Positions 33,601-58,200 of a DNA stretch of 64,000 nt are shown one piece after another; positions within the stretch are counted from its first letter, which is position 1; each line of letters starts with the position of its first letter. Origin of the DNA: Hemiscyllium ocellatum. Its lineage: Eukaryota. The notes below the pieces were generated by a model, which was given only the letters and a program-made list of their open reading frames with translations, was not told the origin of the DNA and did no database searches. Made by a program: the position numbers and the translations under genes. The DNA is taken from NCBI RefSeq assembly GCF_020745735.1, contig NC_083402.1:68710004-68774003 (forward strand). Direction: 5' to 3'.

Positions 33601-33778
33601 ATGCATGATTTGAGATCATTTGAATTTTGATAATTTTTCATTTGTTCTGGTGATTTCAAGACAAAACCCTTTTTTCAGCAATATTCAAAATATATTTTAT
33701 TGTTTGTTATATTGGGGAAAACACAAAGGTTGCTAATGACAGCAAAGAGAACATCCCCATAAATTCATGAATTCTTAC

Positions 33779-38059: not shown

Positions 38060-38143
38060 CTGTCGTACAGAGAGAATTTAACCACAGCCTTTAAACGAGA
38101 AACTTCACACCGAATGCAAACAGGAGAAGGAGTGACTCCTCAC

Positions 38144-38170
38144 CATCGTCCCTGTTACTATGGTTGCCAT
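38144..38170 (-). CDS. CCDC112: CCDC112 probable coding exon 1 (MATIVTGTM)
   Basis: aagATGG Kozak context, GTGAGG donor, 84-bp intron 1, phase 0. Completes a 1488-nt / 495-aa CDS. Confidence 0.72.
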
Positions 38171-38188
38171 CTTTGTCAACAAAGTGCT

Positions 38189-38422
38189 GGGTGTGCGCAG
38201 ACGCAGAATGACCCAAACTGCCCGGGTGTGCGCAGACGCAGAAAGATCCAAACAGCCCGGGTGTGCGCAGACGCAGAATGACCCAAACAGCCCGGGTGTG
38301 CGCAGACGCAGAATGACCTAAACGGCCGGGGCGTACGCAGACGCAGAATGACCTAAACGGCCGGGGCGTACGCAGACGCAGCATGACCAAAACTGCCCGG
38401 GTGTGCGCAGACGTAGAATGAC
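38189..38422. repeat. 35-bp minisatellite, about 6.7 copies, in the bidirectional promoter
   Basis: Unit GGGTGTGCGCAGACGCAGAATGACCCAAACAGCCC; the core recurs at 38191, 38226, 38261, 38296, 38331, 38366 and 38401. Confidence 0.97.
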
Positions 38423-38472
38423 ACTCAGGCACACCTACACCAAGAGTGAATGCGCAGGTGCAAACACTCTGT

Positions 38473-38487
38473 CCGCTAGATGGCGCT
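38473..38487 (+). promoter_or_regulatory. CTCF-like binding motif
   Basis: CCGCTAGATGGCGCT matches the CTCF core consensus CC(A/G)CYAG(A/G)(G/T)GGC(A/G)(C/G). Confidence 0.65.
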
Positions 38488-38850
38488 GGGATTGCAGCAA
38501 AGGCACCAGCATCTTAGCACAAAAAACAACTTTGCAAAGCAAACATATGCAAGCAGAGTGCTGCAAGCTGGCACAACTCCTACTGTAAATTTCTATCGAC
38601 CCCCGCCTACTCACCAAACTCCTTCCTCTCATTCTGCACGCAAACATAGCAGATGTTTAGAAGTTTTCCGCAAACGAAGTTGCTGTGTTGCAGAACGTCC
38701 ATTGATTCATGAACTTTATACATAATTGATAAAAAGGTATTAGGACTGTGGATTCTGCAAAATAAGCTTTTAGGCATGTTGACAACATGCAAATAAATAT
38801 TCTGTTGGGAGTTAGCCACGTGGTGCAAGGAGTTTGCAGATTTCAGCAAA

Positions 38851-39256
38851 ATGGCAGAACAGCAGCAGAGGAGACAGAGACTGCCCAAATTCAGCTCAGA
38901 TGAGCTGGAAGTATTGATTGCAGAGGTGACTGCGCATAAGGATCAACTTTTCAGTCGTGCCCACAGACTGTCACAGGGAGAGCGTGACAGGATATGGCAA
39001 GATATCACTGCCAAGGTCAACGCAGTCTCACAGGTCAAACGGTCTGTAAAGGCCATCAAGACCCGTTGGGATGACCTTATGCGGCGCACTAAAGAAGTTG
39101 CCTACTTGGCACGAGAGGCACATCAGATTCAAGTAGAACCTTCTGGAGCAGAAGATCTAAACCCAGAGGAATGGGGGGTCCATCAGGTCATGCATCCTCA
39201 GTCTATACTTTGGATGGGTGGACTGGATCCTGCAGACTTTCCTTACTGGAGGGCAA
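38851..39256 (+). CDS. Myb/SANT-like DNA-binding domain protein (Myb_DNA-bind_5 / NAIF1-MSANTD-like, Harbinger ORF type), coding exon 1
   Basis: RRQRLPKFSSDELEVLIAEV...LF...RDRIWQDITAKVNAVSQVKRSVKAIKTRWDDL is the family signature. aaaATGG Kozak context; GTAAGT donor at 39257, phase 1. Confidence 0.9.
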
Positions 39257-40671
39257 GTAAGTGTTTCCCTTCAATGAATTCATCATGCTTCTAAATATCA
39301 TTTAATTTTCATTCTGTTTGTAACTAATGGACATTATAGAGAGATTAAATTATCATTTGAAATAATATTTTGCTTCACTTTGGGAGGTGCTGATGGATAT
39401 TTTCTAAACAACCTGTTCAGAGATGTTTTTAAGCACCTCTGGAGCAAGTGGGATTTGAATCAGACCTCCTGGCTCAGAGGTATGGACACTACCTCTGCAT
39501 CATTGCTAAATATCATCAGATTCATAAAACAGAACCCCAGGCTACTGTTCTGGAGATATTGATTTGAATCGCACCAGACGATGGTGAAATTTGAATTCAA
39601 TAGAACCTGGATTAAAAGCCTGCCTGGTCATGATCAGGAAAGCCACTGTCAATTGTTGTAAAACCCAACTGGTTTAGTAATGTCCTTAAGGTTAGGAAAT
39701 CTGCCACCTTACCTGGGCTGGCCTACACATGACTCTGGCAGCCTGTTAATTGCCCTCTGAAATGGCCTAAGCCATTCAGTTGTATCAGACCACTCCAACA
39801 TCTCAAGAAAGGAATGGAAGTTCTCCCCGTGTGGTGCAGATTCGATGAGCCGAATGGGCTCTTTCTGCCCTGTAGGAATTCTCTGATTCTATAACAGCAC
39901 TGTGTCCCCACACACCATGGACAGCAACTGTTCCCCCAAGGCAGTAAGGGATGGGCAATAAATGGTAGCCGAGACAACGATGCCCATAGCTCAAGAATAA
40001 ACAAAACAAAATGCAAGTACATTGGGATTGTTAAGTTACTTTTTGTGTAAAGAAACTCACCAGGAGATAGTTATGAAATGTGCGCTTCCTTTTTCCACGT
40101 TACAGTAATGACTACACTTCAGAAAGTAACTCACTGTCTGTAAAGTAACTCACTGTCTGTAAAGTGCTTTGGCATGTCCTGAGTTCATTGAGATGCTTCA
40201 TACAAATAAAAGTTTTTTTTCTGAATTCATGGTCTAGACATTCATGTATTGGCTGGGCCAAATGACCCTTTTGTATGTTGTACTTGTACGTGCCAAAGTT
40301 CAGATATGAATTGACTGAATCCAAACTGTTTAAATAATTTCAAACATAAAACTAAAAAATATATTCCCACACCAACTGGCATGATAAAAAGCATAAGGGC
40401 TCAGAATCCATGTTCACACCTGGATTGACAGGTTAAAAAAAACACACATTAAGTTAAAATGAACTACTTCTGTCAGGTTTTCCCAGACATAATATGAAAA
40501 GTAATCATGTCTCTTGTTTACTGGAGTAAGAGCTTGGCCCAGTCCAGTCAAGCTGTAGTAAATGGATCCATTTCCTGATTCTTTTGTCCTTTCAGTTTCT
40601 TGGTCATTGGCTTCTTGTTGAGATCAGAATTTACAGTGCAATTGGAAGAAACATCTTTTCCCCTTTCTTTT

Positions 40672-40885
40672 AGAATTCCTACAGAGTGGAAACAGGCCCT
40701 TCAGCTCAACAGGTCTACACTGACTCTCCGAACAGTCTCCCACCCAAACCCAATATGCTATATTTACCCCTGACTAATGCACCTAGCTTACACATCCCTG
40801 AACACTATGCGCAATTTAGCATGGCCAATTCACCTAACCTACACACCTTTGGATTGTGAGAGGAAACTGCAGACATGGGGAGAAT
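40672..40885 (-). mobile_element. HE1-type SINE, 3' half (interrupted by Tx1)
   Basis: Reverse complement of the 3' part of the intact SINE at 52085; continues at 47466. Confidence 0.85.
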
Positions 40886-43800
40886 TTTCTTTTATTTCAA
40901 AAATATACTTTATTCATAAATACTTTGATGATCTATACAACTGGACATGCCGTACATATGTAAACATTCCATTTCTTTGCATACCAAAACAGAGTAATCA
41001 TTCCTATTTACAGGTCGGTATGATTACATTTTGAGCTGAGGTGTCAGCAGAGCCCAAATGACTGCGTGGGCCCCCTGTTCTTCTCAGACAGGCAGATGTT
41101 ACAAGGTGGTCTTGCCCCACGTCGCCTTGGCAGCAGTTGCCCCAAGCTTCAGCGCGTCCCTCAACACGTAGTCCTGAACCTTGGAATGTGCCAGTCTGCA
41201 ACACTCAGTCGGGGTCAACTCCTTCAGCTGGAAGATCAATAGGTCTCGGACCGCCCAGAGAGTGTCCTTCACCAAGTTGATGATCCTCCAGGCGCAGTTG
41301 ATGTTCGACTCAGTGTGCGTCCCAGGAACAGGCCATAGAGCACGGAGTCCTGCGTCACGGCACTGCTCATGATGAATCTCGACAAACACCACTGCATTCC
41401 TCTCCAGACTTCTTCTGCGTAGGCACATTCCAGAATGAGGTATGTGACAGTCTCATCCCCCCCGCAGCCGCTTCGAGGGCAGCGTGCGGTGTGGCTGAGA
41501 GTCCAGGTGTGCATAAAGGATCTCACAGGCAGAGCCCTTCTCACCACCAGCCAAGCCATGTCTTGGTGCTTGTTGGAAAGTTCTGGCAATGAGGCATTCT
41601 GCCAAATGGCTTTGACAGTCTGCTCAGGGAACTGCTCGATTGGATCCGCCCTCTCCTTTTCCCGAAGGGTCTCAAGGATACTACGTGCTGACCACTTCCT
41701 GATGGACTTGTGGCCAAGGTGTTTTTCTTCATAAGTTTCTCCACGAAGGGCAGGTGATAAGGAACGGTCCAACTACTCGGAGCGTTCCGCGGCAGCGAGG
41801 CCAGGCCCATCCTTCGCAACACCGGGGACAGGTAGAACCTCAGTACGTAGTGACACTTGGTGTTTGCCTACCGGGAATCCACACACAGCTTGATGCAGCC
41901 ACACACAAAGGTGGCCATCAGGGTGAGGGTGGTATTGGGTGTACTTTTTCCCCCATTGCTCCGGTCTTTGTACATTGTATCTCTTCGGACCCGGTCCATC
42001 TTTGATCTCCACGTGAAGTGGAAGATGGTCCAGGTGACTGTGGCGGCACAGGTTCTGGGAATAGGCCAGACCTGTGCCACATATAACAATACTGAGAGTA
42101 CTTCACACCTGATGACCAGGTTTTTTCCCGGGATGGAGAGCGACCGTTGCTCCCACCTGCCTAGTTTCTGTCTCATCTTCCTGATCTGCTCCTTGGCGCA
42201 CGCCCCAGCCCCCCCGAACCAAATACCCAGTACCTTCAGGTGGTCAGTCCTGACAGTGAAGGGGATAGAGGATTGGTCGGCCCAGTACCCGAAGAGCATG
42301 GCCTCGTTCTTGCCTCAGTTTACCTTGGCCCCCGAGGCCCGTTCGAACTGGTCACAGATGCACATGAGTCTGTGCACGGACAGCGGATCCGAGCAGAAAA
42401 CGGCAACGTCATCCATGTACAGAGAGGCCTTAACCTGTAGGCCCCTGCTGCCAGGAATAGTCACACCTCTCAGGCTCGCATCCCTGCTGATGGACTTGGC
42501 AAATGGCTCTATGCAACACACAAACAAGATGGGTGAGAGGAGGCAGCCCTGCCTGACTCCAGATCTTACAGGGAAGCTAGCTGATTCCCACCCATTGATT
42601 GAGACTGCACTGACAATGTTGGTGTAGAGCAGTCTGATCCAATTTCCGATTCCCTCCCCAAAGCCCATTTTGGAGAGGACATCCCTCATATGTGTATGCG
42701 ATATCCTGTCAAAGGCTTTCTCCTGGTCCAGGCTGATGAGGCAGGTGTCCACCCCCCTGTCCTGCACGTAGGCAATCGTGACCCTGAGGAGTGCAAGACT
42801 CTCAGAGATCTTCCTGCCCGGTACAGCACAGGTTTGGTCAGGGTGGATCCCAGAGCAGACCTGACCCAGTTGGCGATGACCTTTGACAAGATTTTGTAGT
42901 CTGTGTTTAACAGTGAGATTGGTCTCCAATTTTTGAGTTCCCCCCTCTCCCCCTTCTGCTTGTAGATGAGGGTGATGATGCCTTTCCTCATGGATTCACT
43001 AATGGTACCTGCCTGAAGCAAACTGACATACACCTCCAGCAGGTCCCGGCCAATCAAGTCCCAAAGAGAGGAATAGATCTCGACCGGTAAGCCGTCGCTT
43101 CCGGGAGTTTTATTCTTTTCGAAGGATTCGAGGGCCTTGGTCAGCTCGTCCAGAGATAGCGGCTGGTCCAACCTCTCCCGTGTTCTGTCGTCTATGACCT
43201 CCGTGATAGAGGACAGGAATAAATGGGAGGCTGCGCTGTCGGTCGGCTTCGCGTCATACAGACTGGCATAGAAGGATTTGCTGATCCTCATGACGTCAGC
43301 CTGAGATGACGTTACCGAGCCATCTTCTTCCTTCAGGCTGCTGAGCATGGAGCTCTCTTTGTGCACCTTCTGGAAGAGGAAACGTGAGCACGTCTCATCC
43401 TGCTCCACAGAGCGGACCCTGGACCGGAAGATTATCTTGGAGGCCTCCGAGGCAAAGAGCGAGGCTTGCTGGCCCTTCACTTCCTGGAGATCCTCCATGA
43501 TATCGACCCCCATCGTCTGCAGCAAGAGCAGGTTCTGCATACTTTCCTGGAGCTGGGACAGTTTTCCCCACCTCTCTCTCGCCTCCTGAACACCTTTGAG
43601 GATAAAGAACCTCTTGATGTTCCCTTTTACTGTTTCCCACCAGTCCGCTGGGGACTCAAAGAGGGGCTTCATGGTTCTCCAACCTGCGTAGTCCCTCTTG
43701 AGCTCCTCAATGTTTCCCAGGGTCAACAGCTTTGTGTTCAGCTTCCACGTTCCCTTACCAGCCCACTGCTCATCCTGTAGGCGACAGTCGGCCAGCAGGA

Positions 43801-45776
43801 GGCAGTGGTCAGAGAAGAACACAGGCTTGACGTCGGTGGTTCTGACCGAGAGCATTCGGGACACAAACAGGTAATCTATCCTTGAGTGAATAGACCCGTC
43901 TGCCCGTGACTAGGTGTATCTACGCTGTGCTCCATCTGCAGGGGTGCTGAAGACGTCATGCAGCTTGGCATCTTTAACCATTTCCATCAGGGCTCTGGAT
44001 GTGGCATCCAGTTTACTGTCCCCCCCGCCGGATCGTCCATCTGCATCAATGATACAGTTGAAGTCTCCGGCCAGAATGGCCGGCCTGGACGTAGCCAGCA
44101 ACAGTGGAAGCTGCTACAGGACGGCCAACCGTTCACTCTTATCCACTGGGGCGTACATGTTGATTAGTCTTACGGGAGCTTTTCTGTATTTAACATCCGT
44201 GACGAGGAGGCGTGCGCCCACCACCTCCTTAACCTCGGAGATGGTGAAGTTGCCTCCCCACAACAGGATACCCAGGCCTGAGGAGCAGTTATCGTTGTCC
44301 CCAGACCACACTGACGGCCCATGGGCCCACAAGCTCGACCACCTCCTGTAACTGCTGAGGTGCGGTATCCCACACTCCTGCAGAAACAGGACATCGGCTT
44401 TGACGTTGGTCAGGAAGGCCAGCGTTGAATCACATCTCGCAGCAGATTTGATGCTGCGCACATTAATACTGGCAATTTTAATCCCCATTTCTTTTGCCAA
44501 GTTGTGAGATTACCCGTGTCCAATTGCCGCTGGTCCTGCCCCTCTGGGGTAGCTGTCTGCATCCCCATGCAGAACACGAACTGCTGGACCCTCGCAGCGC
44601 TGAGGTAGCTGTCCAGCTCCTCACTCGGTCCATTTGCCAGCTCCGGTGTCATCGGGCTGCGACCAAGTTCCACGCTGTCTGCTTCTATATCTGACAGCCG
44701 GGCTGTCAGGAGGTCGCTGCTCCCAGTGACCTGGAACTGTGTGGCGGTGGGGCCCTCCTGGCTTTCACCTGGCGGGGGTGGTAGCTTCCCATTGCCTCAG
44801 GAAGTTCGTCCGTTGGTGGGCAGTTGCTGCTCTCCTTTCTCCCCGCAGCACTCTGCCTCTTCTTTTGGTGACGACCCTCCTTACGTCCGTCCTCACCCTC
44901 CGAAGAGCTGTCCGTGTCTTCCCCATGCAGCTGCCTTTTCCCCTTTTTCTGGGAGGTTTGGCGGCCGGGTGGGTTTTCCTCCTCTTGTTTTGCACCAGGA
45001 TCTATTCCTCTGCCTCCTTCTTTCCCTTCTCCTCCTCCTCCGCCTGTCCTGTCGGAGCATTGCTCAGCAGCTGTCCCTCTCCAGTAGCTATCGTCTGCTC
45101 TGCTCCGGCCTGTCCTTCTTTTTGCGTGCCCCCAGACACTGTTCCCTTGCTGGTTTGTGGCCTACCCCCAGCCATCTGCGCGTAGGTGGCGGCCCCACAT
45201 CTTGGGCAGGCCTTGTACACGTGGCCTGCCTCCCCGCACAGATTGCAGTTCTTGACCTCCTTGCTTTCTTTGGTCGGGTGGCCCTCCTTCTTGCAGTTCC
45301 GACAGATCGTGACCTTGCAGTCCGCCGCCATGTGGCCTGACCTCCCGCAGGTTCGGCACACTTTCCCTGCCCTGCATAAGTCAGGTACCCTCTGCTCCCT
45401 CTGATAGCAAAGCTGGAGGGTGGGTGGAGGATGTTCCCGCTGGCATCAACCCTCAGGGTTACCTTGACCTGTCGTTTGCTGGTCCAGATCCCGAGAGGGT
45501 CAACCATGTCAGTGCTTTCTCCCTCAACCTGCATATATCTCCTCAGGAACGTTGGGACATCAGTTGCTGGAACATAGGGGTTGTACATGTGGATCGTGAC
45601 AACCCGACTCCTCTGTGCAGGAAGCACACACAGCGGGACCGCCGACAAGATGGAGAACAGCGGCTCACCTTCCGTTTACTTGAAGACCTTCAGGAGCTGC
45701 TCGCATTGCTTCATGCTCATGAAGGTGACATCGAAGTAGCCTGCCCCAGGGAAATCCTGCAGGCAGTACACATCCT

Positions 45777-47118
45777 TTTTTTTAATTTCAAAATATACTT
45801 TATTCATAAAATAATTTGATGGTCTGTACAGTTTGTCATGCCGTACATACGTAAACATTAACATACAGAGATCAGAATTTATCATTGTTATATACAGGTC
45901 TGTACATTTTTCAATCATATCCCCATATATTTAGCTGAGGCGTCAGCAGAGCCCAAATGACTGCGTGGGCCCCCTGTTCTTCTCAGACAGGCAGATGTTA
46001 CACTGTGGTCTTTCCCCACCGTGCCTTGGCGGCAGCTGCCCCAAGCTTCAGCGTGTCCCTCAACACGTAGTCCTGGACCTTGGAATGTGCCAGTCTGCAA
46101 CACTCAGTCGGGGTCAACTCCTTCAGCTGGAAGATCAACAGGTTTCCGACCACCCAGAGAGCGTCCTTCACCGAGTTGATGATCCTCCGTGCACAGTTGA
46201 TGTTTGTCTCGGTGTCCATCCTGGGGAACAGATCGTAGAGCACGGAGTTCCGCGTCACGGCGCTGCTCGGGACGAACCTCAACAAACACCACTGCATTCC
46301 TCTCCAGATTTCTTCTGTGTCGGCACATTCCAGAAGGAGGTGTGTGACAGTCTCGTCCCCCCCTCAGCCACTTCGAGGGCAGCGTGCGGTGTGGCTGAGA
46401 GTCCAGGCGTGCATAAAGGATCTCACAGGCAGAGCCCTTCTCACCACCAGCCAAGCCATGTCTTGGTGCTTGTTGGAAAGTTCTGGCAATGAGGCATTCT
46501 GCCAAATGACTTTGACAGTCTGCTCAGGGAACCGCTCGATTGGATCCGCCCTCTCCTTTTCCCAAAGGGTCTCAAGGACACTGCGTGCTGACCACTTCCT
46601 GATGGACTTGTGGTCAAAGGTGTTTTTCTTCATAAACTTCTCCACGAAGGACAGGTGGTACGGAATGGTCCAACTACTCGGAGCGTTCTGCGGCAGCGAG
46701 GCCAGGCCCATCCTTCGCAACACTGGGGACAGGTAGAACCTCAGTACGTAGTGACACTTGGTGTTTGCGTACCGGGGATCCACGCACAGCTTGATGCAGC
46801 CACACACATAGGTGGCCATCAGGGTGAGGGTGGGATTCGGTGTATTTTTTCCCCCGTTGCCTAGATCTTTGTACAGCGGGTCCTTTTGGACCTGATCCAT
46901 CTTTGATCTCCATATAAACTGGAAGATGGCCCGGATGACTGCATCGGCACAGGTTCTGGGAATAGGCCAGACCTGTGCCATGTATAATAGCAATGACAGT
47001 GCCTCACACCTGATGACCAGGTTTTTTCCCGCGATGGAGAGTGACCGTAGCTTCCGTCTGCCTAGTTTCTGCCTCACTTTGCTGATAAGCACCTCCCAAG
47101 GCGCACGCCTTCAGATGG
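45777..47118 (-). mobile_element. 5'-truncated Tx1 copy nested inside ORF1 of the full-length Tx1
   Basis: 8-bp TSD CACATCCT at 45769-45776 and 47119-47126; has its own A-tail; ORF 46364-47092 duplicates the ORF2 C-terminus. Confidence 0.95.
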
Positions 47119-47427
47119 CACATCCTCTGCAGCGAACCCACAAGAATCGAGCAGAATCTTCTTGACGAACACTATCCGATCGACCGGTGTACACTCCTCC
47201 AGGGTGACTATCCACTCTGACTATGTTGCGAACGCCCTGGACCGTGGTGCGGGCAGCTGTTGAGGCCATAGCTCTGAGGTTGGCTGGTCTCCGAATTGGC
47301 GTTAGGCCGAAGCCAGCATGAAGATCCGCCAATAGCAGGTCAGCACAACCAAACGATCCTCCAACATCCAATCACAATCCAGTGATGATCTCCACTAGCT
47401 CTGATGACTCGCAACTCGACCCCCGTC

Positions 47428-47464
47428 CTGATAAGAACAGACATTTGATCTTAGCCAAAAGGCC
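47428..47464 (-). pseudogene. U2 snRNA 5' fragment (about nt 11-52, 5-nt internal deletion) fused to the Tx1 5' end
   Basis: Minus strand reads GGCCTTTTGGCTAAGATCAA-atg-TCTGTTCTTATCAG versus recalled vertebrate U2 GGCCTTTTGGCTAAGATCAA-GTGTAGTA-TCTGTTCTTATCAG. Confidence 0.9.
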
Positions 47465-47465
47465 A

Positions 47466-47563
47466 AATGTTCAAACTCCACAGACGGTCACCCAAGGCTC
47501 AAATCGAACCCAGGCCCTTGGTGCTGTGAGGCAGCAGTGTTAACCAGAGCCACTATGCTGCCC
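47466..47563 (-). mobile_element. HE1-type SINE, 5' half (tRNA-derived head)
   Basis: Minus strand GGGCAGCATAGTGG...GGTTCGATT...GTGGAGTTTGAACATT; joins the half ending at 40885. Confidence 0.85.
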
Positions 47564-47974
47564 GTATGACTGCCTGTAAATTTTTCACCTGTAGCCCAAT
47601 CAGATTTAGTGTGATTTGGTGCAGTCTAAAAGCTCACTTCCCTCTGTCTAAGCAGTAGGCTTTCATCCTAATCTGAGGGGAGTAAGGCCTACTGTTTGGA
47701 TGTGAGTGATCTCAATTTGCAAATCAGACATCTGATTGGCTCCTGAATGAGTTTATCAAGTGGAATTCAGTTGTCAGCAGTTTGTTTTGAACCTGATCTT
47801 GGCATTCTTCACCAAGGCTGTATTTTATGATTTTTGATTTGATTTATTTTTGTCACAAGTACTGAAATACAGTGAAAGGTATTGTTTTGTCTGATAACCA
47901 GACAAATCAGACCTTACATAAGTATATCAGGGTAATAGAACAGAATGCAGAATATATTTTTACAGCTACAGAGA

Positions 47975-48285
47975 ATCATGGAAACCCTAGAGTGTGGAAG
48001 CAGGCCATTCAGCCCATTAAGTCCACACCAACGGTCTGAAGAACATCCCACCCAGACCCACTCTGATGCCCTATCCCTGTAACCTTGCATTTCCCATGGC
48101 TAATCCACCTAACCTACACATCTCTGGACACTATGGGTAATTTAGCGTGACCAATCCATCTAACTTGCACATCTTTGGACTGTGGGAGGAAACCAGAGAG
48201 TGTGGAGACAGTGAAAATGTCAGCCAAGGGTACCAAGGGTAGAATCAAACCTGGGTCCCAGCTAATCACTGAACCACCATACTGT
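47975..48285 (-). mobile_element. Degraded HE1-type SINE
   Basis: Contains ttggactgtgggaggaaaccag and other segments complementary to the SINE at 52085. Confidence 0.7.
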
Positions 48286-51200
48286 TGTTTGAGAAGGTGC
48301 AGAGGAAGATCAACTATGATATATGAGAGGTCTGTTCAGAAATCTGATAACAGCCGAATCTGTTGTTGCGCATATTCAAAGTTTTGTATCTTTTACCTGA
48401 TGGAGAGAAACAGAAAAATGTATAACCGGGGTGGGGGGGATCTTTGATTGTGTTAGCTGCTTTCCTGAGACAGCGGTCTTAGGCAGAGCAGATGCCATGT
48501 CAAACTGTGATACATCCAAAATGATTTGGAGGTGCTAGTGTTGGACTGGGGTGGACAAAGTTAACTTAAATCACACAACACCAGTGCAACAGGTTTGTTT
48601 GGTATGTTCCAAAAACCAGTACTTCCAAATAAACCTGTTGGACTATAACCTGGTGTTGTGTTATTTTTAACTTTGTATACGTAGTTAGATTGCTCTCTAA
48701 GGTGGGTGTAGAAGTCATTGTGCACTTACTGAATTCCCTTAGCCTTCTGAGGAAATAGAAGCGGTGGGGTGCTTACTTGACTGCAGCATCAATGTGGATG
48801 GCCCAGGACAGATTGTTGCTGATATTTACTCCCAGGAACTTGAAGCTCTTGACCACTTCCATCTCAGCACCACTGATACAGACAGGAGTGTGTCCTAAAT
48901 GCACCTCAAGCCACTGTTTTGTTTTTCCAGTGAGTGCAACACTGTACTTGGATCATGAATTTCCCTTGAATTGAGACTTTTCATGTGACCCTTATAATTA
49001 TGAGGATGGAGACACTCCCAGCACATCCATCTCGGGTGGAATAAAACATAGGCTTGGGAAATGAAAAATCAAATTGCAGAGGGCTCTCCCACAATTTCAT
49101 GTTTAAGTAGAGCTTTGAGATTGCTGAGGAAGCCACTATATAACCTGGGTTTGTCTATAAATGTACATAATGTAAAAAAAAACAAGAATGGAAATGCACA
49201 GATATAGTAAATATGTGAAAAACATATTTATTTTTCAATTTGTCAATACCTTACTACAGCCTGGACTTGTGCATTAAACGGCACTGAAAAATATTGGGGA
49301 GTTAGCAGTGGTAAAAGTCTTCTTTTGCTGTTTAGTGTGCAATTTTCAGACAAGGGCAATACAACCTACCATCACATCAATGTAGCTAAGACTCCTTTCT
49401 GGGTTTTCCTGCTGCAATCTCACGTCCTAGAATCTTTCGACAGCTTTCACTGTTTTAACCCTGGAAACTGGCAGGTGGGCATTCATCAGGGTCTAACTCC
49501 ACATCCTCACCATAATGCCATGACTTGAATTGGCCCAGCTATCCATCACTGCAGCTGTATTGCTATGGCCCTGGCTCTTTGCCAGTGTGATTCCTATTGC
49601 CTGCAGCATTGGTCAGAGTTGGGAATTCTCTGCCGCAGCTGGTACAGCCACCCTGCTTGGATCAGATGGTTAGGATCACATGGTTACATTACCATGTGTA
49701 CACAGACTTGATTAACGTGAAGCTACCAATCTGAAATTATTAGATTTCTTATTCTGCTGCGAGAATGGCTGACAACTTTATCACAGTCGGAGTTTCAGGT
49801 TATCTGGATTTGACTCATGATTTCACTCTACACTGACCCAATGCACCAGTACCTCTCCTATTGTTTCACTTCTAGATATGGATTCAGCTCCGCATATATC
49901 AATGAGATTCCTGCTCGTACGAATTCATTGTGTATATCAGAATCAGGTGCAGCAGGATCAGTTCAGATATGGAGCATGCTTTGGAGTTAATTGATGATCT
50001 TAGTTTCTGTTACTGGATTGCCAGTTTTAATGTGCTTCTATAAAAAAAAATCTGGCATGCAACTGCCATATCAAGACTTGGTCACACAGTTCCCAGCCAG
50101 CTTTCCAGTGTAATACTGAGGCACTGCTACACTCCAAGAGCTGCTGTCTTTTGATGAAATGTTAAACCATTGTCTTGATGGTTCATTTGGATGGTCAAGA
50201 TCCTTGGCACATTTTTAATCAATATTCAAATTAGTATCACTGTCATTTATCGCATTATTGGGATATCTGGCACAAAGCAACTGCTACTTTTACATAAATC
50301 ACACTTCTAAAGTATAGTGAACTTATATGAAATGTTTTAATTTGATTGGGGTGCCAAATTAATTCAAATATCATATAGATGTGGTAATATTGATTTAAAA
50401 GTAGAAAGTCTATCCTGTCCCCATGTTGATCTTACATTATTGTAGTGCCCTATATCATCCTCAGCTCATCCCAAACTGTTGTGCATTAGATTCTGTTTGA
50501 AGTGTGAGTGGTTGAAGGAGATGACAGCACCTTTACAGTTAAAATATTGATCAATCCATGAAACAGAAATTGAAAGATAATACTTCCTTGCAGATTTAAA
50601 ATCAGAGTGGTCCGAACAAAATGCAAGGCTGGACTTTATGGAGGAAACAGTTCCAAAGATAAAGAACTGCTTCAAAGTTGAATACTAAATCAGAAGCGGA
50701 ACAAATGATGGGTATATGAATAGGAAGGGTTTCGAGAGATATGGGCCAAGTGCTGGCAAATGGGACTAGATTAATTTAGGATATCTGGTCAGCATGGATG
50801 AGTTGGACTGAAGAGTCTGTTTCTGTGCTGTACCTCTCTATGACTTTTAAGTTGCTGCACTACTAAATTTAATAGGTTCTATAGCTGATTATGTTATAAA
50901 TCACCGGAAGATAAAGGTAGGTAGAGACACTAAAGAATAGCAGCCGTTGACAACAGCAAACATGCCCAAGCACTATTCGTTTGGTTTGGTCACTTTTTGT
51001 CATTTCCTGAAGTTGTTTCTCAACTTGATTCATTAAGAATGTTTCGAAGAATAACGAAGAATCTTTCCTTAACAATATGTTATATTCATTACTGAGTTTG
51101 CCTGATTCTGTGAAACAATTTTTGATAGTATGTCTCAAAGAAACTTTTCTCCTTATGCTTTTCAGACTTTTTGAGGAAGATTGAGGACACAGTATGCTTT

Positions 51201-52084
51201 CTTGCTCAATAGTCTGGTTTCCTTCACCTCAATGATTGATGCATTCTCTACTATCTGACATCCTTTATGTTGTAAGATTAATTGCAGCTGTAGATTTGCA
51301 GGTTATAACTTCTTTTTTTCAAGCCTTAGCATTTGTTTGAATAATCCAGTCATACTTCCCCCTGTATCAAGCTTAAATTGAGTACGATATCCAGTGACAT
51401 AAGTAAATTCAGTCTTTTCGATAATGGTGGATCTCCTGTATGCTACAGGAATGCTTTGAGTATCTCTTCCAATGGAGTTATATCTTCACATGAGGGTTTC
51501 TTTTTTAACGGAGATGGCTGATCTAGTGTATTAAGATCTCTATGTTAGTACGTCCACTGTTCTGGAACTTGTTTCAGACCCTACACATCTTTTGGATTTT
51601 ACCCTTTTTTTAACAGATGCAATACACTTTGTCACAGCTGAACACTGCTTTTAGCCTGTCAGGCATTTTATGTCCCACCACATTAACACTGACTCGAAGT
51701 ATTTGATCTCATGCTTTTTTTTTGTTGCCTTGTCATATATCTGTTTAGAATGTGTGTGTGTGTAATGTTAATAAAGTTCTGTACTTCTTATATGGCAAGG
51801 TTGTTCTTTTCCTGTGAGGAGTTTTCTGTGATTTTCCCTCGTGTCTGCTTCACGGTCTCTGCGTGATTTGTACAGTTATGTTTCCTTTGGTCTGTAATCT
51901 GTCTGACAAAGACTGACCAAGTATTCCTCCATGAATTGTGACCTTTATGAACTTGGTCTGCAAGGTTCTATGTACACAGGTTTCAGCTAATTTGGAGTGG
52001 TCACTCATAAAATTGTCTCTGAAATCCATCTTGCCTGTTGAAGAATTGTATTTGTTCTCAAGTAAAAGTATTGCCAAAGTTTTT

Positions 52085-52392
52085 GGGCGGCACGGTGGCA
52101 CAGTGGTTAGCACTGCTGCCTCACAGCTCCAGGGACCTGGGTTCAATTCCCGCCTCAGGCGACTGTCTGTGTGGAGTTTGCACGTTCTCCCCGTGTCTGC
52201 GTGGGTTTCCTCCAGGTGCTCTGGTTTCCTCCCACAATCCAAAGATGTGCGGGTTAGGTGAATTGGCCATGCTAAATTGCCCGTAGTGTTAGGTAAGGGG
52301 TATGGGTGGGTTGCGCTTCGGCGGGTCGGTGTGGACTTGTTGGGCCGAAGGGCCTGTTTCCATATTGTAAGTAATCTAATCTAATCTAATCT
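52085..52392 (+). mobile_element. Intact HE1-type tRNA-derived SINE (V-SINE superfamily)
   Basis: A box TGGCACAGTGG, B box GGTTCAATTCC, central GTGGAGTTTGCACGTTCTCCCCGTGTCTGCGTGGGTTTCCTCC domain, (TAATC)n tail. Confidence 0.93.
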
Positions 52393-52518
52393 TTTTATAA
52401 CATAATCAAATCTTCTGGTGATTTATAACATCATCAACTATAGGACCAATTAAATATAGTGGTTAGTAACTTGTTCTGCTTCTGAGTTAGTGTTCAGCTT
52501 TGAAGCAGTTCTTATCTT

Positions 52519-52890
52519 AGTTAAAAATCACACAACACCAAGTTACAGTCCAACAGGTTTAATTGGAAGCACACTAGCTTTCGGAGCGACGCTCCTTCAT
52601 CAGGTGATAGTGGAGGGCTCAATCCTAACACAGAATTTATAGCAAAAATTTACAGTGTGATGTAACTGAAATTATACATTGAAAAATTGATTGTCTGTTA
52701 AGCCTTTCATCTGTTAGAATACCGTGATAGTTTCACATCTTTCATGTGTAAATCACAAAACCTTTTTTTAAAAAGTTGCCTTCTCGGGACAGCTGTTAGC
52801 AATGGTGATGGTTAGACAATATGTTGAACTTGTTGGCTCCTTGTGTTCTCTGTCTATGACCTGATGTTTAGATTGATTCTAATCTAAAAA
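52519..52890 (-). mobile_element. Penelope-like 3' terminal fragment with hammerhead motif (52572-52606)
   Basis: Near-identical to 62783-63155. Flanked by imperfect direct repeats GTTCT(T)TATCTT (52508-52518 and 52891-52902). Confidence 0.85.
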
Positions 52891-54517
52891 GTTCTTTATC
52901 TTCGGAACTGTATCCTCCAAAAATTCCAATCTTGGGTTTTACTAGGAACTCTCTGATTTTGAATGTGCTCGGAAATGTTATTTTTTAATTTCTCTTTTAA
53001 TGGATTGACAAATATTCTGACTTTAAAGGTATGCACTATTTGTTTATGATTAAATATTGTATCTGCTTGTCTTCTTATATTTAGGAATACAGTTTATTTT
53101 AAATCACTGTAAACTTTGCTAGTGATGTATGTTATTTATTAACCAGTCTTTGTTATTTCAATTTCGGAGTTGAACTGTATCAAATTCTTCTAATAAAGCT
53201 TGGAATTGTATATACTGGGTATTCTACAGTGATTTACTGTTCTAGCTTTTAAATTTCATTTTCTTGAAGAGCTCATGTATTTTTAAATGGTTTGGAATTT
53301 AAAACTTTGCAGTGTGGCAATATTCTCCTAATAAAGCTTTTACAATTCTTCTAAATGTTTTAAAAGTTGTGGAATCTTTTAAATACATTTTCTTAGTAGT
53401 GTTATTGTACCCTTCCTTATTTTAGGATTCAAAATAAAGGAATCCTGCTCCTCTTGTTTCTTTTTGGGAAGTTTCACATCTTTTTGAACAAAATGGAGGG
53501 TACATGTCATTTTCTATTTTTGGGGTGATTGGCGCATTTTTCCCCTGACAAAATAGCATATTCATACTTGTTCCACTATTAAATATGTTCTGTATTTTTC
53601 CTTGCCCATGACGTGCTTTATTCAACCTAATTGTCTTTTGCAGTGACTTGGAAGGTGAATTTTTTTGATGGTTTAAAGGAATTGACATATGTTGACTTTT
53701 ACATTTCATAAACCATGGGACCAAAAAAATCGGTTACATTGTTGCAGAAGATGATGGTCATGATAAGGGGTTAACATTCATATTACAGCGGTCCCACCCA
53801 TTCAACTGATGGTTGAGACAAGGACAAAACATAGGTGTAACAGCTCTCAGTGGTCTTCATAATTAGGCAATAAACCTTCTTGTTATCTAAGAGTACCTCT
53901 CTTGTGGATACTGTTCACTAATTGCCAGATTGCCAGATAGGCTCAAGATAAAGCAAAGACAAAGGAGAATTGGTGTCAGTAACTTATTCCAAACAACCCT
54001 TAGGCAGTTGGTAGAGGTTGCAAATTCCAGAAGATACTTGGTGTCATCATCTTGGAAAATACCACAATGATAATGTTTCAGAATGTATACCGTTTGAACA
54101 AAAGGTTGTTTAACTGACTAATTTGTTTATAATCTTTAAAAGGACAGTGTTGCTGTGGACTGTTGATCTTGCTTAATATTTTCCATTGTTTATATTAAAA
54201 AAAAGATTGCAATGGTACAATGTGTTGCCAGTTGCACCTGAGGCCAAGAAAGTGTGTATTTTTATTTGAATTGCTGCTACAGACATTTCACTGATGGCCA
54301 ACTCAGTAATGTCTGTAAATAATTCGGAGCGTGCTGTTCAATTCATCGAGTCAGCCCAAAACTGCCCATAATGCAATATAATTCAAATTTTAATACCATT
54401 TAAAATGATTAGAAGGTTTGAATTTTTAAAACACATTATAGGGACCTTACTGATGGAAAACGGTGTTTGTCGGTTCTTGTGATTTAACACAGTAACCTCT
54501 AATTGTATTTTTTCCAG

Positions 54518-55203
54518 TCAAGGAAGAAGGAGGATCCTACGCAGAGGAAGCTGGTCCATCGAGAGAACAACTCATTTGCAATGAGGATGGAGCAAGAAGT
54601 TGGACACCATCCTCAGAATCTCCAACTACCCCTAATATGCCACCCTCACTATCAGAGACATACGTTTCTCACAGGGATGCATGCCCACCACCCAATGCCA
54701 AATTAGTGAATGAATTTGAAAGGCAACTGCTTGAATCTCAAAACCAGCAGACTGTACTCTTGAGAGATTTTTGGGTAGAATTCCAGCCCCTTATGCGGGA
54801 TCTCATACAGGCAACCCGGGAGTTAGCTCATGAAACTCACTTAGTAGCTGAGCATACCCATCAGGTGGCCCAGCAGACAAAGGGAGTGGCTGAGAACACC
54901 AGAGAATTGGTGCTGCAAAACCAGCAGTTACTCCTTCACACCCAGGAAATGGCACAAAACATCTCAGAGATGCATCTGTCCTTGCAGCAGCATTTCTCCC
55001 ACACATCCCTTGAGCCACCAAGGCTCATGAGGTCCATGCTCGAACAACCAATCCACAAAACAAATTCAGAAGGCCACTCTCCCATACACCCTCCTCAGCC
55101 CCAGAGTCTAGGATCTTCTACAGTGCAGCAACCAGAAGCACTTTGTTTTGCATTAACAAGAAGGAAGTCTAGGACCCCCGAAAAGAAAAGACGATTATTC
55201 TGA
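54518..55203 (+). CDS. Myb/SANT-like protein, coding exon 2 (linker, heptad coiled coil, basic C-terminus)
   Basis: ttttttccAG acceptor at 54517; phase 1 matches exon 1 (junction A|TC AAG GAA GAA = IKEE). Open for 686 nt into ORF 54637-55203. AATAAA at 55337-55342. Spliced product 363 aa. Confidence 0.8.
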
Positions 55204-58200
55204 GGGAGACATGTGACATAGACTACAATGCGTCAAACAAAGATGTTTAATTCTTTACTGAATATATTTTTAAAATATTTTGTTATATTTTTGATTGCAA
55301 TGTATTGTTCTACTTTTTTTTCTATGTATGTATCAAAATAAAACATCACTTGTTAGTTTTGTTTCAACCATTTTTAAAGAATCTGACATAGAGCAGCATT
55401 GTGCCAAATCTGCATGACAGGAAAAGTTACTCTTGAGGTTATAAAAGTTTGATTTGTATTTATGCTATCTTCATCCCTTCTAGGTGGCACACATTACATT
55501 ATTGGATGATAGGACTAGCAATAGGTAGTTATCATGAAAAGCTAGGACACTGTTTAGATTCTTACCATTTTAAATTTGTTCACATGACATAGGTGTCATT
55601 GAGTAGGCCAGCATTTGTCTCCCATCCCCATTGTTACCAAAGCTCTGGCCTGTGCCTCTATTCCTGCAACAAAGAAAAAAGCTTTCCTCATGTTACTGGA
55701 AGTGACGTCGTAGAGTGCAGTCCTGTGTTTTGTTTCGCATAACTCTTTGAAGTTCTGGGCAGCAGCCCTCTCCTCAGAAGCCAGTAGGATGTTGGCACAT
55801 CCTTGTTGAATCCCCACTCTTCAGGCTGCCATGTGTTTGTGTGAATCACCTGATGTCACTTCCTTACCAGCCTTTTCTAATTCCCTCAGGTGAAATAATC
55901 TGAATTGAGCCAGGAGTTTGAGCTGGAGAAGGAACAGAGAATAATGGGAAAAGAAGTTTGAGCAGGTGCTAATGGATAGTTTCAGATCCAAGTTGATCTC
56001 CTCCCTCACTCCTTCATCCTCGTTCTCCTTTGTTCCCCATCATTGTTGTTTGCATGAGATAGTTGTGTCCCTATTGTCCTCATCACTGTCTTTTCCCAAC
56101 TGTGCCACCATGCTTACCTCACCCCATTGCTGATCAATCTACAGGAAAGAAGATATTAGCTGAGAATGGGATTGAAGCTTGAGGTAGGCAATGAATGGTT
56201 AAGGGGCTCAGTCTGCCTCCATCCATTTCCCAGTATCCCTGAACAGGAAGCATGCAATTGCAATATGTTTCGGTATATGTGGACCTTGTCTGACGAGAGG
56301 ACACAGGAGAGGTATCATTGCCTTCAGATATGCTAATTTAGCTTGTTAAGTTTCTTTTCAGTTTTATTGTGGTAATCCTTTCAAGAGGGGTCACATATTA
56401 CAATCAATGGAAGTACAACAGCTAGAAGGTCATGGTGTTTCACAGGGAAGTCACAATAAGTGTGTTCAACCAGTATCTCAGGCAGCAGCAATACACTTTT
56501 CGATCTGATCATCTGTGAGGAAGCAGCAGAGAACCTCCCAGTGACTAATCTATTTTAAACATTTCTCCTGAACAGACAACATTAACACCAAGTTGAAATT
56601 GGATTCTCTTTCTGGAAGTGGTGTCTGCTATGGGCAGCGGTTAGGCTTGTGGCTTTCCCATCAAACCCCACCAAACTGAGTTAATCAATAATTCACTTTA
56701 ATTGTGGCAACATGTTTTTTAGAAGCCTTTATAATCAAGATCTCATAGATATGTCGCCAATTAATAAGAAAGGAATCAAGGCAGAAAAAATTGGATTGAA
56801 TTTTTCAAACAATTTTCTTTCACTCCTCTAACTGACATGAGTCAAATTTAAATCTTCTCTCACTTGCACCTTCACATAGAACCCTTTCTCCCTCTCTACT
56901 TGGACAGCACTAATCACTTTTTGATCCCACCCTCCAGCCAGCTGTCACTTGATGCCAAGCTGAGATAAACAATTAGGCAGAAGTAGGTACTGCAGATGCT
57001 GGAGATTAGAGTGGTGCTGGAAAATCACGACAGGTCAGGCCCTCATTCCTGATGAAGGGCTTTTGCCCGAATTGTCAATTTTCCTGCTCCTCGGATGCTG
57101 CCTGACCTGCTGTGCTTTTCCAGCACCATTCTAATCTTGAGACAAACAATTGCCAACTCACAAGCAGATAAGGTTTGAAAGTTGAAATTGTCCAGGTCTC
57201 ACACTGAGAGGTCAAGGTTCAGCATTTGCCTGAATAAACATCACGTGTCTGTTTTCTACTTGTGGTTAAAAAGGGGCTTGTGTACACTTTGGTGGGACTA
57301 ATGGTTGACCAAATGCTAAGTAGCTGATGGCCCTCAGAGGGCTATACTCTTCAAATACAAAAGGAGCTATGGGGATGTCAGTTCCCAGTCATGACCCCAT
57401 AACCAGATTGCACTTGGAAGAGTTAGTTATTCTTGATGAAGGGCTTTTGCCCGAAATGCCGATTTTACTGCTCCTCGGATGCTGCCTGAACTGCTGTGCT
57501 TTTCCAGCACCACTAATCCAGAAAAGAGTTAGTTAAAGTCTAGTTGTTAATTTCAAAATGAGAAATTTGCTGTTGCCCTTAGAAGAAATGGTAGGATAGT
57601 TCCTCGTTACCTTGATCAACTCATTGAACATTTTCCAGCGCGTGGATTGAGGACACAAGGAATCTGCAAGGTAGGCTGAGTGAATGTCCAAAAATTGGCA
57701 GATGGAGTTTAATATAGGAAAGTGAGAGATTATACACTTGGTCAGGAGAAAAGGTTAGCCCAGTGCCAGTGTCTTCTCTTGGCATAAGTAGTCTTGTTAT
57801 CCATCTCAGTCCCATGGGAACAAAACAGTTTACCTGTCCGAAAAAGAGCAAAATACTGCAGATGTTGGAGATCTAAAATAAAAACAGCAAGTTCTAGTTC
57901 TGGCAGCATCTGTGGAGAGAGAAACAGAGCCCATATTTTGAGTCCAATATGACTTAGTTGGAATTCCATTTTCTACCTGTCCTGGTTACTCTTCCAAACT
58001 TGTGATGTTTATTTCAACTGATCGTTTTGTGACTATTCCTTCTATAGTTCTCCTGTGTTAGACATTCTTAGAAAATGGCACAAAGCAGTTATGGCACAAA
58101 ATAGTTATGTCACATGCTATCAAGCTGACTGAGCCAAACAATCTTTTTCTACTTTTCTGCTTGTGCCTAGCCTGTCGCTGCAATCTTCAATTAAAACTGC

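What the first reader, a model, noticed from the sequence alone, without database searches (positions are those of the whole stretch)
38851..55342. Candidate lineage-specific domesticated Harbinger-type Myb/SANT gene head-to-head with CCDC112
Seen: two intact exons 15.26 kb apart splice in frame (phase 1) into a 363-aa protein with an N-terminal Myb/SANT-like domain, a coiled coil and a basic tail. It has a Kozak ATG, a polyA signal, and a start 680 bp from the CCDC112 ATG. Neighbouring transposon ORFs are broken while this one is open, and its intron has accumulated many insertions. I found no TIRs or DDE transposase partner. Known: PIF/Harbinger transposons encode a Myb-like protein that was repeatedly domesticated (NAIF1, MSANTD family), and as I recall human CCDC112 is flanked by PGGT1B and FEM1C with no such gene. 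Inference: an old, possibly chondrichthyan-specific domesticated transcription or chromatin factor that captured the CCDC112 promoter in the antisense direction.
Basis: partly seen in the sequence, partly recalled or inferred. Interest (0 to 1): 0.85.

Follow-up and report, generated by a model that had tools for sequence, protein, structure and literature searches.

The report
Shark-lineage Myb gene from a Harbinger transposon
This is a real two-exon gene for a DNA-binding Myb/SANT protein with a long coiled coil, most likely derived from a Harbinger-type transposon, kept under selection next to CCDC112 in sharks and rays (and present in a chimaera); it is already annotated but unstudied, and no equivalent was found in bony vertebrates.

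Summary
Exon 1 (38851-39256) and exon 2 (54518-55203) join in phase 1 into a 363-aa protein. That protein is 100% identical to a RefSeq model named 'MYPOP-like' in Hemiscyllium ocellatum. Full-length orthologues occur in 14 chondrichthyan species including a chimaera. Intron position, phase and the head-to-head CCDC112 neighbour were checked in whale shark and sawfish and are the same. dN/dS is about 0.22 overall and about 0.09 in the Myb domain. No terminal inverted repeats, transposase or second copy were found.

An exhaustive profile search of 1.84 billion representatives found no full-length relative outside Chondrichthyes. The nearest relatives are about 31% identical over about 250 residues. 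They are the Myb-like module at the bird PRDM11 locus and a coelacanth model. A careful tree separates this clade from MYPOP, PRDM11-Myb/TSNARE1 and NAIF1-like genes.

A teleost relative with the same layout and a phase-1 intron lies 1.3 kb from a DDE_Tnp_4 transposase gene. This supports a Harbinger origin.

Verdict: a new member of a known kind, of moderate interest. Two points stay open. NCBI labels two orthologues with a zebrafish symbol that I could not retrieve. Promoter sharing with CCDC112 is inferred only.

The parts
38851..39256 (+). Coding exon 1 (residues 1-135 plus the first base of codon 136). The Myb/SANT-like domain, residues 10-82, is coded at 38878-39096.
39257..54517 (+). 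Phase-1 intron of 15,261 bp, GTAAGT...CCAG. The same position and phase are seen in whale shark (7,550 bp) and sawfish (6,036 bp).
54518..55203 (+). Coding exon 2 (residues 136-363 and the TGA stop). It codes an acidic, Ser/Pro-rich linker, the FERQLLESQNQQT motif, the long helix, a disordered tail and a basic C-terminus.
54712..55002 (+). Predicted single long helix or coiled coil (residues 201-297). It includes five heptads of the form x-T-x-x-[V/L]-A-x.
55159..55200 (+). Basic C-terminal tail (residues 350-363, with KKRRL). It is a likely nuclear localisation signal; K358, K359, R360 and L362 are invariant in ten orthologues.
   Evidence: NLS function is inferred
55337..55342 (+). AATAAA hexamer 134 nt after the stop codon. 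It is not conserved as a canonical hexamer in whale shark or sawfish.
37750..38750 (.). CpG island spanning the 680-bp gap between the two ATGs. GC is 0.51-0.57 and CpG observed/expected 0.66-0.92, against 0.34 for the whole window. Candidate bidirectional promoter.
   Evidence: promoter function is inferred
38189..38422 (.). Tandem array of a 35-bp unit, 6.7 copies, inside the CpG island.
25776..38170 (-). CCDC112-like neighbour (CCDC148/CCDC112 family, annotated product 495 aa), with its ATG at 38170. Open frames that contain exons lie at 33768-33929, 27052-27495, 26198-26626 and 25776-25946.
41100..47100 (-). L1-like LINE insertion or insertions within the intron. It carries an ORF1 with a ZCCHC3-type RNA-binding domain and zinc knuckle, RT split across frames, and zf-RVT. 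It is absent from the whale shark intron.

Best explanation
This is a single-copy host gene derived from the Myb-like (second) gene of a PIF/Harbinger-type transposon. It was fixed before the shark-chimaera split and kept under purifying selection in cartilaginous fishes.

The 363-aa protein has four parts:
- an N-terminal trihelix Myb/SANT DNA-binding domain;
- a disordered acidic linker;
- a helix of about 97 residues that most likely forms a homo-oligomeric coiled coil;
- a basic C-terminal nuclear localisation signal.

The most likely mode of action is a nuclear, sequence-specific DNA-binding adaptor or transcription/chromatin regulator. It would bind DNA through the Myb domain and oligomerise or recruit partners through the coiled coil, as transposon-borne Myb-like proteins and NAIF1 do. 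It is probably transcribed divergently from the CpG island it shares with CCDC112.

Shown here: the gene model, its conservation, the selection on it, the shared neighbour in shark and sawfish, the domain folds, and the absence of transposon hallmarks.

Inferred: DNA binding, oligomerisation, nuclear import, promoter sharing, and the Harbinger origin itself.
For: - **Gene model:** identical to RefSeq.
- **Orthologues:** colinear 359-371-aa proteins in 14 chondrichthyan species, one locus each where a contig is on record.
- **Structure and neighbour:** the same phase-1 intron and the same CCDC112 head-to-head neighbour in whale shark and sawfish.
- **Selection:** dN/dS is 0.22-0.23 overall, 0.08-0.11 in the Myb region and 0.14-0.16 in the coiled coil across the shark-sawfish distance.
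- **Domain:** Myb_DNA-bind_5, E 1e-18.
- **Solved-structure match:** the best hits are the Zeste DNA-binding domain bound to DNA (TM by target 0.75) and the GT-1 trihelix.
- **Predicted-structure match:** the best Swiss-Prot hits are MYPOP, MSANTD4, NAIF1, MSANTD3 and TSNARE1.
- **Helix:** a long confident helix at residues 201-297.
- **Harbinger link:** the teleost relative P0219 has the same layout and a phase-1 intron, and lies 1.3 kb from a DDE_Tnp_4/Plant_tran gene.
- **Literature:** NAIF1 and MSANTD1-4 are described as Harbinger Myb-like derivatives, and MYPOP, PRDM11 and TSNARE1 as putative ones (PMC9392472).
- **Promoter region:** a CpG island lies between the two ATGs.
Against: - No transcript or protein evidence could be examined.
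- The Harbinger link is indirect. I did not show that the Gouania Myb-DDE pair is a mobile element: no flanking TIRs stood out and its copy number is unknown.
- The tree does not place the shark clade next to the Gouania group.
- Deep branching among Myb_DNA-bind_5 clades is unresolved. Independent domestication therefore cannot be told from duplication of an older domesticated gene.
- NCBI's zebrafish-derived name on two orthologues suggests a teleost counterpart may exist.
- The predicted structure is a monomer model of the whale shark orthologue. The oligomeric state is a guess.
Confidence: 0.65

Rival explanations
1. It is an ancient jawed-vertebrate gene and not a chondrichthyan-specific one. 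Bony fishes would keep a fast-diverged orthologue, for example zebrafish si:ch211-261d7.3, perhaps also beside ccdc112. The apparent restriction would then come from divergence and from the limits of my searches.
For: - NCBI names the Rhincodon and Stegostoma orthologues 'si:ch211-261d7.3'. That naming normally follows a computed orthology.
- Several actinopterygian and sarcopterygian proteins share the F[D/E]xQLLxxQxxQT motif and the coiled coil.
- The emu relative has its intron at the aligned position and in the same phase.
Against: - The exhaustive profile search found only two clusters at E<1e-30. One is the chondrichthyan cluster. The other is a coelacanth model that matches only residues 7-127 and 176-246.
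- The bony-vertebrate relatives I could place sit at other loci: inside PRDM11 in emu and between KIFBP-like and IRF genes in Albula. The Alosa copy is intronless and isolated, and the Gouania copy lies beside a DDE gene.
- No CCDC112 exon was found in any of those loci.
- Only two of the named orthologue models carry the zebrafish symbol.
Confidence: 0.25
2. It arose by duplication or relocation of an already domesticated Myb-like gene, such as the lineage that gave the PRDM11-linked module and TSNARE1. It would then not be a separate capture of a transposon gene.
For: - The nearest non-chondrichthyan relatives are the PRDM11-linked and coelacanth proteins. They are 31% identical over residues 8-260 and about 57% identical in the Myb core.
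- They share the FDRQLL.SQ.QQT motif.
- The emu gene has a phase-1 intron at the aligned position.
Against: - The careful tree does not join the two clades. PRDM11-Myb groups with TSNARE1 at 100/99 support, while the shark clade stands apart in a polytomy.
- The Gouania gene, which sits beside a transposase gene, has the same layout and intron phase. The shared features could therefore be inherited from the transposon gene itself.
- The loci differ.
Confidence: 0.3
3. It is simply the cartilaginous-fish orthologue of MYPOP, as the RefSeq name 'MYPOP-like' suggests.
For: - The RefSeq product name.
- MYPOP is the best Swiss-Prot structural match.
Against: - MYPOP sequences from frog, bat and yak form their own 100/100 clade, apart from the shark clade.
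- Identity to MYPOP is about 39% and confined to roughly the first 115-125 residues (Myb domain and the adjoining stretch), against about 57% in the Myb core for PRDM11-Myb.
- The structural match has TM near 0.2. It reflects shared architecture only.
Confidence: 0.03
4. It is a decaying transposon remnant or a chance open frame without function.
For: The region is rich in repeats, and the intron holds LINE debris.
Against: - The frame has stayed open in 14 chondrichthyan species, from sharks and rays to a chimaera.
- dN/dS is 0.22.
- Splice sites and intron phase are conserved.
- The locus is the same in shark and sawfish.
- There are no TIRs.
Confidence: 0.02

Closest known systems
Myb-like module at the PRDM11 locus of sarcopterygians (annotated in birds as 'MYPOP-like' or as PRDM11 isoforms; PRDM11 is listed as putatively Harbinger-derived in PMC9392472)
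   Same: - It is the best non-chondrichthyan sequence match: 31% identity over about 250 residues and about 57% in the Myb core.
- It shares the FDRQLL.SQ.QQT motif followed by a helix, and a basic C-terminus.
- It has two coding exons split by a phase-1 intron at the aligned position.
   Different: - It lies inside PRDM11 and not beside CCDC112.
- Its coiled coil is shorter.
- The tree does not join the two clades.
- It is spliced to PR/SET exons in some models.
NAIF1 and MSANTD1-4 (Harbinger Myb-like-derived vertebrate genes; Sinzelle 2008 as cited in PMC9392472; Etchegaray 2022)
   Same: - An N-terminal trihelix Myb/SANT domain followed by helical and disordered regions.
- A single-copy host gene under selection.
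- Structural hits to NAIF1, MSANTD3 and MSANTD4.
   Different: [quoted passage not shown] This gene was found only in Chondrichthyes.
- Sequence similarity is limited to the Myb domain.
- A separate shark 'NAIF1-like' group exists (P0012-P0017) and forms its own clade.
MYPOP (p42POP)
   Same: - A Myb_DNA-bind_5-type N-terminal domain followed by a helical region.
- It is the source of the RefSeq product name.
- It is the top Swiss-Prot structural hit.
   Different: It forms a separate, fully supported clade, and identity is only about 39% over the N-terminal 115-125 residues.
Myb-like protein of PIF/Harbinger transposons (for example the Gouania willdenowi gene P0219 next to a DDE_Tnp_4 gene)
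   Same: The same order of Myb domain, D/E-x-x-LL-Q-rich motif, helix and basic tail, with two coding exons and a phase-1 intron about 50 residues after the Myb domain.
   Different: - Here there is no transposase partner, no TIRs and one fixed locus.
- Identity is only about 28%.
- The Gouania group falls in the other half of the tree.
Drosophila Zeste and plant GT-1 trihelix DNA-binding domains
   Same: Best solved-structure matches to the N-terminal domain (5cqq, TM by target 0.75, solved in complex with DNA).
   Different: Similarity is at the level of fold only (24% identity), and the rest of the protein is unrelated.

Membership tests
Domesticated Harbinger Myb-like genes (NAIF1/MSANTD/MYPOP/PRDM11-Myb/TSNARE1 group) | N-terminal SANT/Myb/trihelix domain of the Myb_DNA-bind_5 type | tested here: met
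   Pfam PF13873 at E 1.4e-18 over residues 10-82. The model shows three helices at pLDDT of about 90. Fold matches are Zeste and GT-1.
Domesticated Harbinger Myb-like genes (NAIF1/MSANTD/MYPOP/PRDM11-Myb/TSNARE1 group) | Demonstrable kinship with Myb-like proteins encoded beside a DDE_Tnp_4 transposase | tested here: inconclusive
   The relative P0219 has the same layout and intron phase and lies 1.3 kb from a DDE_Tnp_4 gene. However, the tree does not place it nearest, and the mobility of that pair was not shown.
Domesticated Harbinger Myb-like genes (NAIF1/MSANTD/MYPOP/PRDM11-Myb/TSNARE1 group) | Loss of transposon hallmarks: no TIRs, no adjacent transposase, single fixed locus | tested here: met
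   The longest flanking inverted repeat is 11 nt, within the shuffled range. There is no second copy in the window. Shark and sawfish share the same neighbour. Each orthologue with a contig on record lies on a single contig.
Domesticated Harbinger Myb-like genes (NAIF1/MSANTD/MYPOP/PRDM11-Myb/TSNARE1 group) | Purifying selection across orthologues | tested here: met
   Nei-Gojobori dN/dS is 0.22-0.23 in three pairwise comparisons and 0.08-0.11 in the Myb region.
Domesticated Harbinger Myb-like genes (NAIF1/MSANTD/MYPOP/PRDM11-Myb/TSNARE1 group) | Expression as a spliced host mRNA | not testable with these tools
   No RNA-seq data were available. RefSeq models exist in 14 species, but their evidence was not visible.
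Active PIF/Harbinger transposon | TIRs, a DDE transposase gene, and multiple near-identical copies | tested here: not met
   the only transposon ORFs nearby are LINE-derived. The orthologue is at the same position in other species.
MYPOP orthologue group | Clusters with MYPOP sequences in a phylogeny | tested here: not met
   MYPOP forms a 100/100 clade that excludes the shark clade.
PRDM11-linked Myb-like module | Location within or adjacent to PRDM11, and a monophyletic grouping | tested here: not met
   The emu relative lies inside PRDM11, while this gene lies beside CCDC112. The two clades are not joined in the tree.
Bidirectional CpG-island gene pair | Head-to-head starts less than 1 kb apart within a CpG island | tested here: met
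   The gap between the two ATGs is 680 bp, and CpG observed/expected is up to 0.92 over 37750-38750. Divergent transcription itself was not tested.

The most novel reading that the evidence does not exclude
This would be an independent transposon-gene capture, confined to cartilaginous fishes and more than 400 million years old. Its unusual Thr/Val/Ala heptads (x-T-x-x-V/L-A-x, five in a row, resembling designed 'Type-2' coiled coils) would build a higher-order helical assembly. That would make an oligomeric DNA-binding factor with a lineage-specific regulatory role, possibly in partnership with HARBI1 or another transposase-derived protein.
Probability: 0.2. Interest if true: 0.55.

Novelty: new member of a known kind. 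Interest (0 to 1): 0.4.

Why it matters
Recurrent capture of the Harbinger Myb-like gene is a recognised source of vertebrate regulators: NAIF1, MSANTD1-4, and probably MYPOP, PRDM11 and TSNARE1. The published catalogue was built from human genes, so it misses lineage-restricted cases. This gene would add a chondrichthyan-restricted example, conserved from sharks to a chimaera and held at the same locus in shark and sawfish. It gives a clean case for asking what such captured DNA-binding adaptors do when no transposase partner is linked to them. It would not change current concepts.

Tried and rejected
- **Zebrafish gene:** I tried to retrieve the protein behind the NCBI symbol si:ch211-261d7.3. 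Two full-text searches found no paper. The word-indexed protein searches returned only chondrichthyan orthologues or were swamped, probably by poly-Q words from one orthologue. The atlas search gave only family-level clusters.\n- **Synteny of relatives:** the Erpetoichthys and Pleurodeles look-ups returned no DNA and no neighbouring genes. The Latimeria, Gouania X2 and P0090 products were not on record. The Alosa copy is intronless with no neighbour within 10 kb.\n- **Fused gene models:** Pfam scans of ten long models among the hits, in search of a Myb-DDE fusion, found none. The partners were KRAB, Syntaxin_2, CARD and C2H2.\n- **CCDC112 exons:** Pfam gave no direct hit. Their identity rests on the atlas hit to the CCDC148 family, the annotation of this genome, and exon homology.\n- **Solved structures:** a sequence search found only designed coiled coils.\n- **Rfam:** no family reached the gathering threshold anywhere in the window.\n- **Rejected readings:** active transposon, chance ORF, and MYPOP orthologue.

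Full report
**1. The observation**

Exon 1 starts at an ATG at 38851 in a good Kozak context (A at -3, G at +4). It ends at 39256, directly before GTAAGT. Exon 2 follows a pyrimidine tract and AG at 54516-54517 and runs from 54518 to the TGA at 55201-55203. The two pieces total 1092 nt. They join in phase 1 and translate to 363 residues with a single terminal stop.

Pfam places Myb_DNA-bind_5 on residues 10-82 with E 1.4e-18. Weaker hits go to related Myb/SANT and MADF models. Exon 2 matches no family.

The spliced protein is identical at all 363 positions to XP_060700522.1, named 'myb-related transcription factor, partner of profilin-like', from Hemiscyllium ocellatum. It is preceded on the other strand by a 495-aa gene with a confident CCDC148-family Pfam hit, whose coding range ends 681 bases before the Myb ATG. 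This puts the neighbour's ATG at window 38170, where the minus strand reads ATGGCAACC.

So the anatomy is right in every detail. However, the gene model is not new: RefSeq already carries it.

**2. Conservation**

A search with exon 2 alone returned full-length proteins of 359-371 aa from eleven chondrichthyans, including Callorhinchus. The 90% cluster of the whale shark protein adds two Chiloscyllium species and Hemiscyllium. The total is 14 species.

The alignment is colinear across the splice junction. The split codon (Ile) is invariant, and 134 columns are invariant across ten species.

In whale shark and sawfish the coding sequence has the same two exons: a 406-nt exon 1, a GTAAGT donor, and a phase-1 intron of 7.5 or 6.0 kb. 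Both loci carry a minus-strand gene directly upstream that contains the CCDC112 exon-2 homologue at 84-90% identity.

Pairwise Nei-Gojobori dN/dS values are:

| Region | dN/dS |
|---|---|
| Whole coding sequence | 0.22-0.23 |
| Myb region (residues 1-135) | 0.08-0.11 |
| Coiled coil, shark-sawfish distance | 0.14-0.16 |
| C-terminal tail, shark-sawfish distance | 0.57-0.66 |
| C-terminal tail, window-whale shark | 0.25 |

The window is about 80% identical to whale shark DNA through introns and flanks. The size difference between the introns comes mainly from an insertion of about 6.9 kb at 40.7-47.6 kb. Its ORFs are L1-like: a ZCCHC3-type RNA-binding domain, a zinc knuckle, split RVT_1 and zf-RVT.

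**3. Not a transposon**

The longest inverted repeat between the two flanks is 11 nt, which is within the range seen in shuffled sequence. The window holds no second copy. Each orthologue for which a contig is on record sits on a single contig.

**4. What the protein looks like**

I ran AlphaFold2 on the whale shark orthologue, which is 90% identical, with a 24-row alignment. It gives confident Myb helices at residues 16-91 and one uninterrupted helix at 201-297 with pLDDT above 90. The linker and the tail are disordered.

The best solved-structure match is the Zeste DNA-binding domain bound to DNA (TM by target 0.75), followed by the GT-1 trihelix. Among reviewed proteins the best predicted-structure matches are MYPOP, MSANTD4, NAIF1, MSANTD3, FSBP and TSNARE1. 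Most of these belong to the set discussed as Harbinger Myb-like derivatives (PMC9392472).

The helix carries five consecutive heptads of the form x-T-x-x-V/L-A-x. The only PDB sequence hits are designed Type-2 coiled coils with Thr at position a and Ile at position d. This is a lead on oligomerisation and nothing more.

The C-terminus ends in an invariant KKR.L, which is a likely nuclear localisation signal.

**5. Relatives outside Chondrichthyes**

A profile of ten orthologues was scored against every one of 1.84 billion cluster representatives. Only two hits reached E<1e-30. One is the chondrichthyan cluster. The other is a coelacanth model fused to LIN37.

The next hits are:
- bird proteins annotated as MYPOP-like or as PRDM11 isoforms;
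- a wombat protein;
- proteins from sturgeon, newt, bichir and lungfish;
- a few teleost proteins;
- true MYPOP and TSNARE1.

BLASTP gives 31% identity over residues 8-260 for the coelacanth and bird proteins, and about 57% in the Myb core.

The C-terminal similarity is real. A profile of residues 135-363 alone finds the coelacanth and bird proteins at 1e-8 to 1e-11. A motif F[D/E]xQLLxxQxxQT followed by a helix is shared by four groups: the shark clade, the PRDM11-linked clade, a bichir/Albula clade and a Gouania/Sphaeramia clade.

The relatives sit at other loci:
- The emu gene lies inside PRDM11.
- The Albula gene lies between KIFBP-like and IRF genes.
- The Alosa copy is intronless and alone.
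- None of these loci contains CCDC112 exons.

A careful IQ-TREE analysis (LG+C20) recovers five clades, each with support of 100/99 or better: the shark clade, MYPOP, PRDM11-Myb with TSNARE1, the bichir/Albula clade, and the shark 'NAIF1-like' paralogues. The nodes that would join them are unresolved. The gene is therefore not the MYPOP orthologue its product name suggests, and it has no demonstrable orthologue among named vertebrate genes.

**6. The Harbinger link**

The Gouania willdenowi relative P0219 has the same order of parts: Myb_DNA-bind_5, a D-L-E-LL-QQQ motif, a helix and a basic tail. It lies 1.3 kb from a convergent two-exon gene for a 344-aa DDE_Tnp_4/Plant_tran protein. A Myb-like gene beside a DDE_Tnp_4 transposase is the signature of PIF/Harbinger elements (PMC9392472).

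The shark gene, the emu PRDM11-linked gene and the Gouania gene each have two coding exons split by a phase-1 intron about 50 residues after the Myb domain. The emu intron falls at the aligned position of the shark intron. The whole gene architecture, and not just the domain, is therefore shared with a gene that sits beside a transposase gene.

Two caveats apply. I saw no clear TIRs around the Gouania pair and could not measure its copy number. The tree also does not place it next to the shark clade.

**7. The promoter claim**

The 680-bp gap between the two ATGs lies in a CpG island. GC is 0.51-0.57 and CpG observed/expected is 0.66-0.92, against 0.34 for the whole window. The island contains a 35-bp unit repeated 6.7 times.

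This fits a bidirectional promoter. Whether the Myb gene 'captured' it cannot be decided from sequence.

The AATAAA at 55337-55342 is not conserved as a canonical hexamer in whale shark or sawfish, although the 3' UTR around it is well conserved.

**8. Verdict**

This is a real, annotated, uncharacterised gene. It is best read as a domesticated Harbinger-type Myb-like gene, present in sharks, rays and a chimaera, and so far found only in Chondrichthyes. It most likely encodes a nuclear DNA-binding protein that oligomerises through a coiled coil.

It is a new member of a known kind. The paper that lists Harbinger Myb-like derivatives does not mention CCDC112, and the zebrafish gene symbol occurs in no searchable paper.

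The main open point is the zebrafish symbol that NCBI put on two orthologues, which I could not follow up.

Noticed in passing
window 38189-38422: A 35-bp unit repeated 6.7 times (90% matches) sits inside the CpG island between the two divergent genes. Whale shark shows extra alignments to this stretch, so copy number probably varies between species.
   Followed up: partly
window 41100-47100 (minus strand): An L1-like LINE lies in the intron. It has an ORF1 with a ZCCHC3-type RNA-binding domain and CCHC knuckle, RT split over several frames, and zf-RVT. A second partial copy lies at about 46.0-47.1 kb. The whole block is missing from the whale shark intron.
   Followed up: partly
window 38060-38170 versus L001:9170-9370: The whale shark RefSeq model of the neighbour fuses CCDC112 with a prenyltransferase (PGGT1B-like), giving 774 aa. 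It also starts at an ATG 86 nt downstream of the conserved one, and that codon is GTG in this window. The whale shark model is probably wrong at both ends.
   Followed up: partly
window 55204-55400 versus L002:17129-17340: The first 130 nt or so of the 3' UTR are clearly alignable between epaulette shark and sawfish, with long identical runs. This looks more conserved than the coding dS of about 0.6 would predict and hints at regulatory constraint.
   Followed up: no
P0010 / P0226 (Amblyraja radiata): The skate has an annotated isoform X2 of 252 aa that lacks the Myb domain but keeps the whole exon-2 part. This could be a coiled-coil-only form.
   Followed up: no
L003:10001-12784 (Dromaius) and P0022/P0170-P0182: In birds a 337-aa Myb + coiled-coil gene lies inside PRDM11 on the same strand. 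Some models splice it to the PR/SET exons (516-aa 'PRDM11 isoform X4'). The coelacanth counterpart is modelled as a LIN37 isoform.
   Followed up: partly
L006:10001-15699 (Gouania willdenowi): A Myb-like gene and a DDE_Tnp_4 gene face each other 1.3 kb apart, both with one intron, between a MARVEL-domain gene and an ASPSCR1-like gene. This is either a Harbinger element without obvious TIRs or a co-domesticated pair.
   Followed up: partly
P0012-P0017, P0131: Sharks carry a second gene of similar length (366-385 aa) and architecture, annotated as NAIF1-like. It forms its own fully supported clade. A sturgeon NAIF1-like protein aligns to the query over its full length but only weakly.
   Followed up: partly
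residues 234-270 of the protein (window about 54811-54921): Five consecutive heptads of the form x-T-x-x-V/L-A-x. The only PDB sequence hit is a designed Type-2 coiled coil with Thr at a and Ile at d (E 0.005).
   Followed up: no
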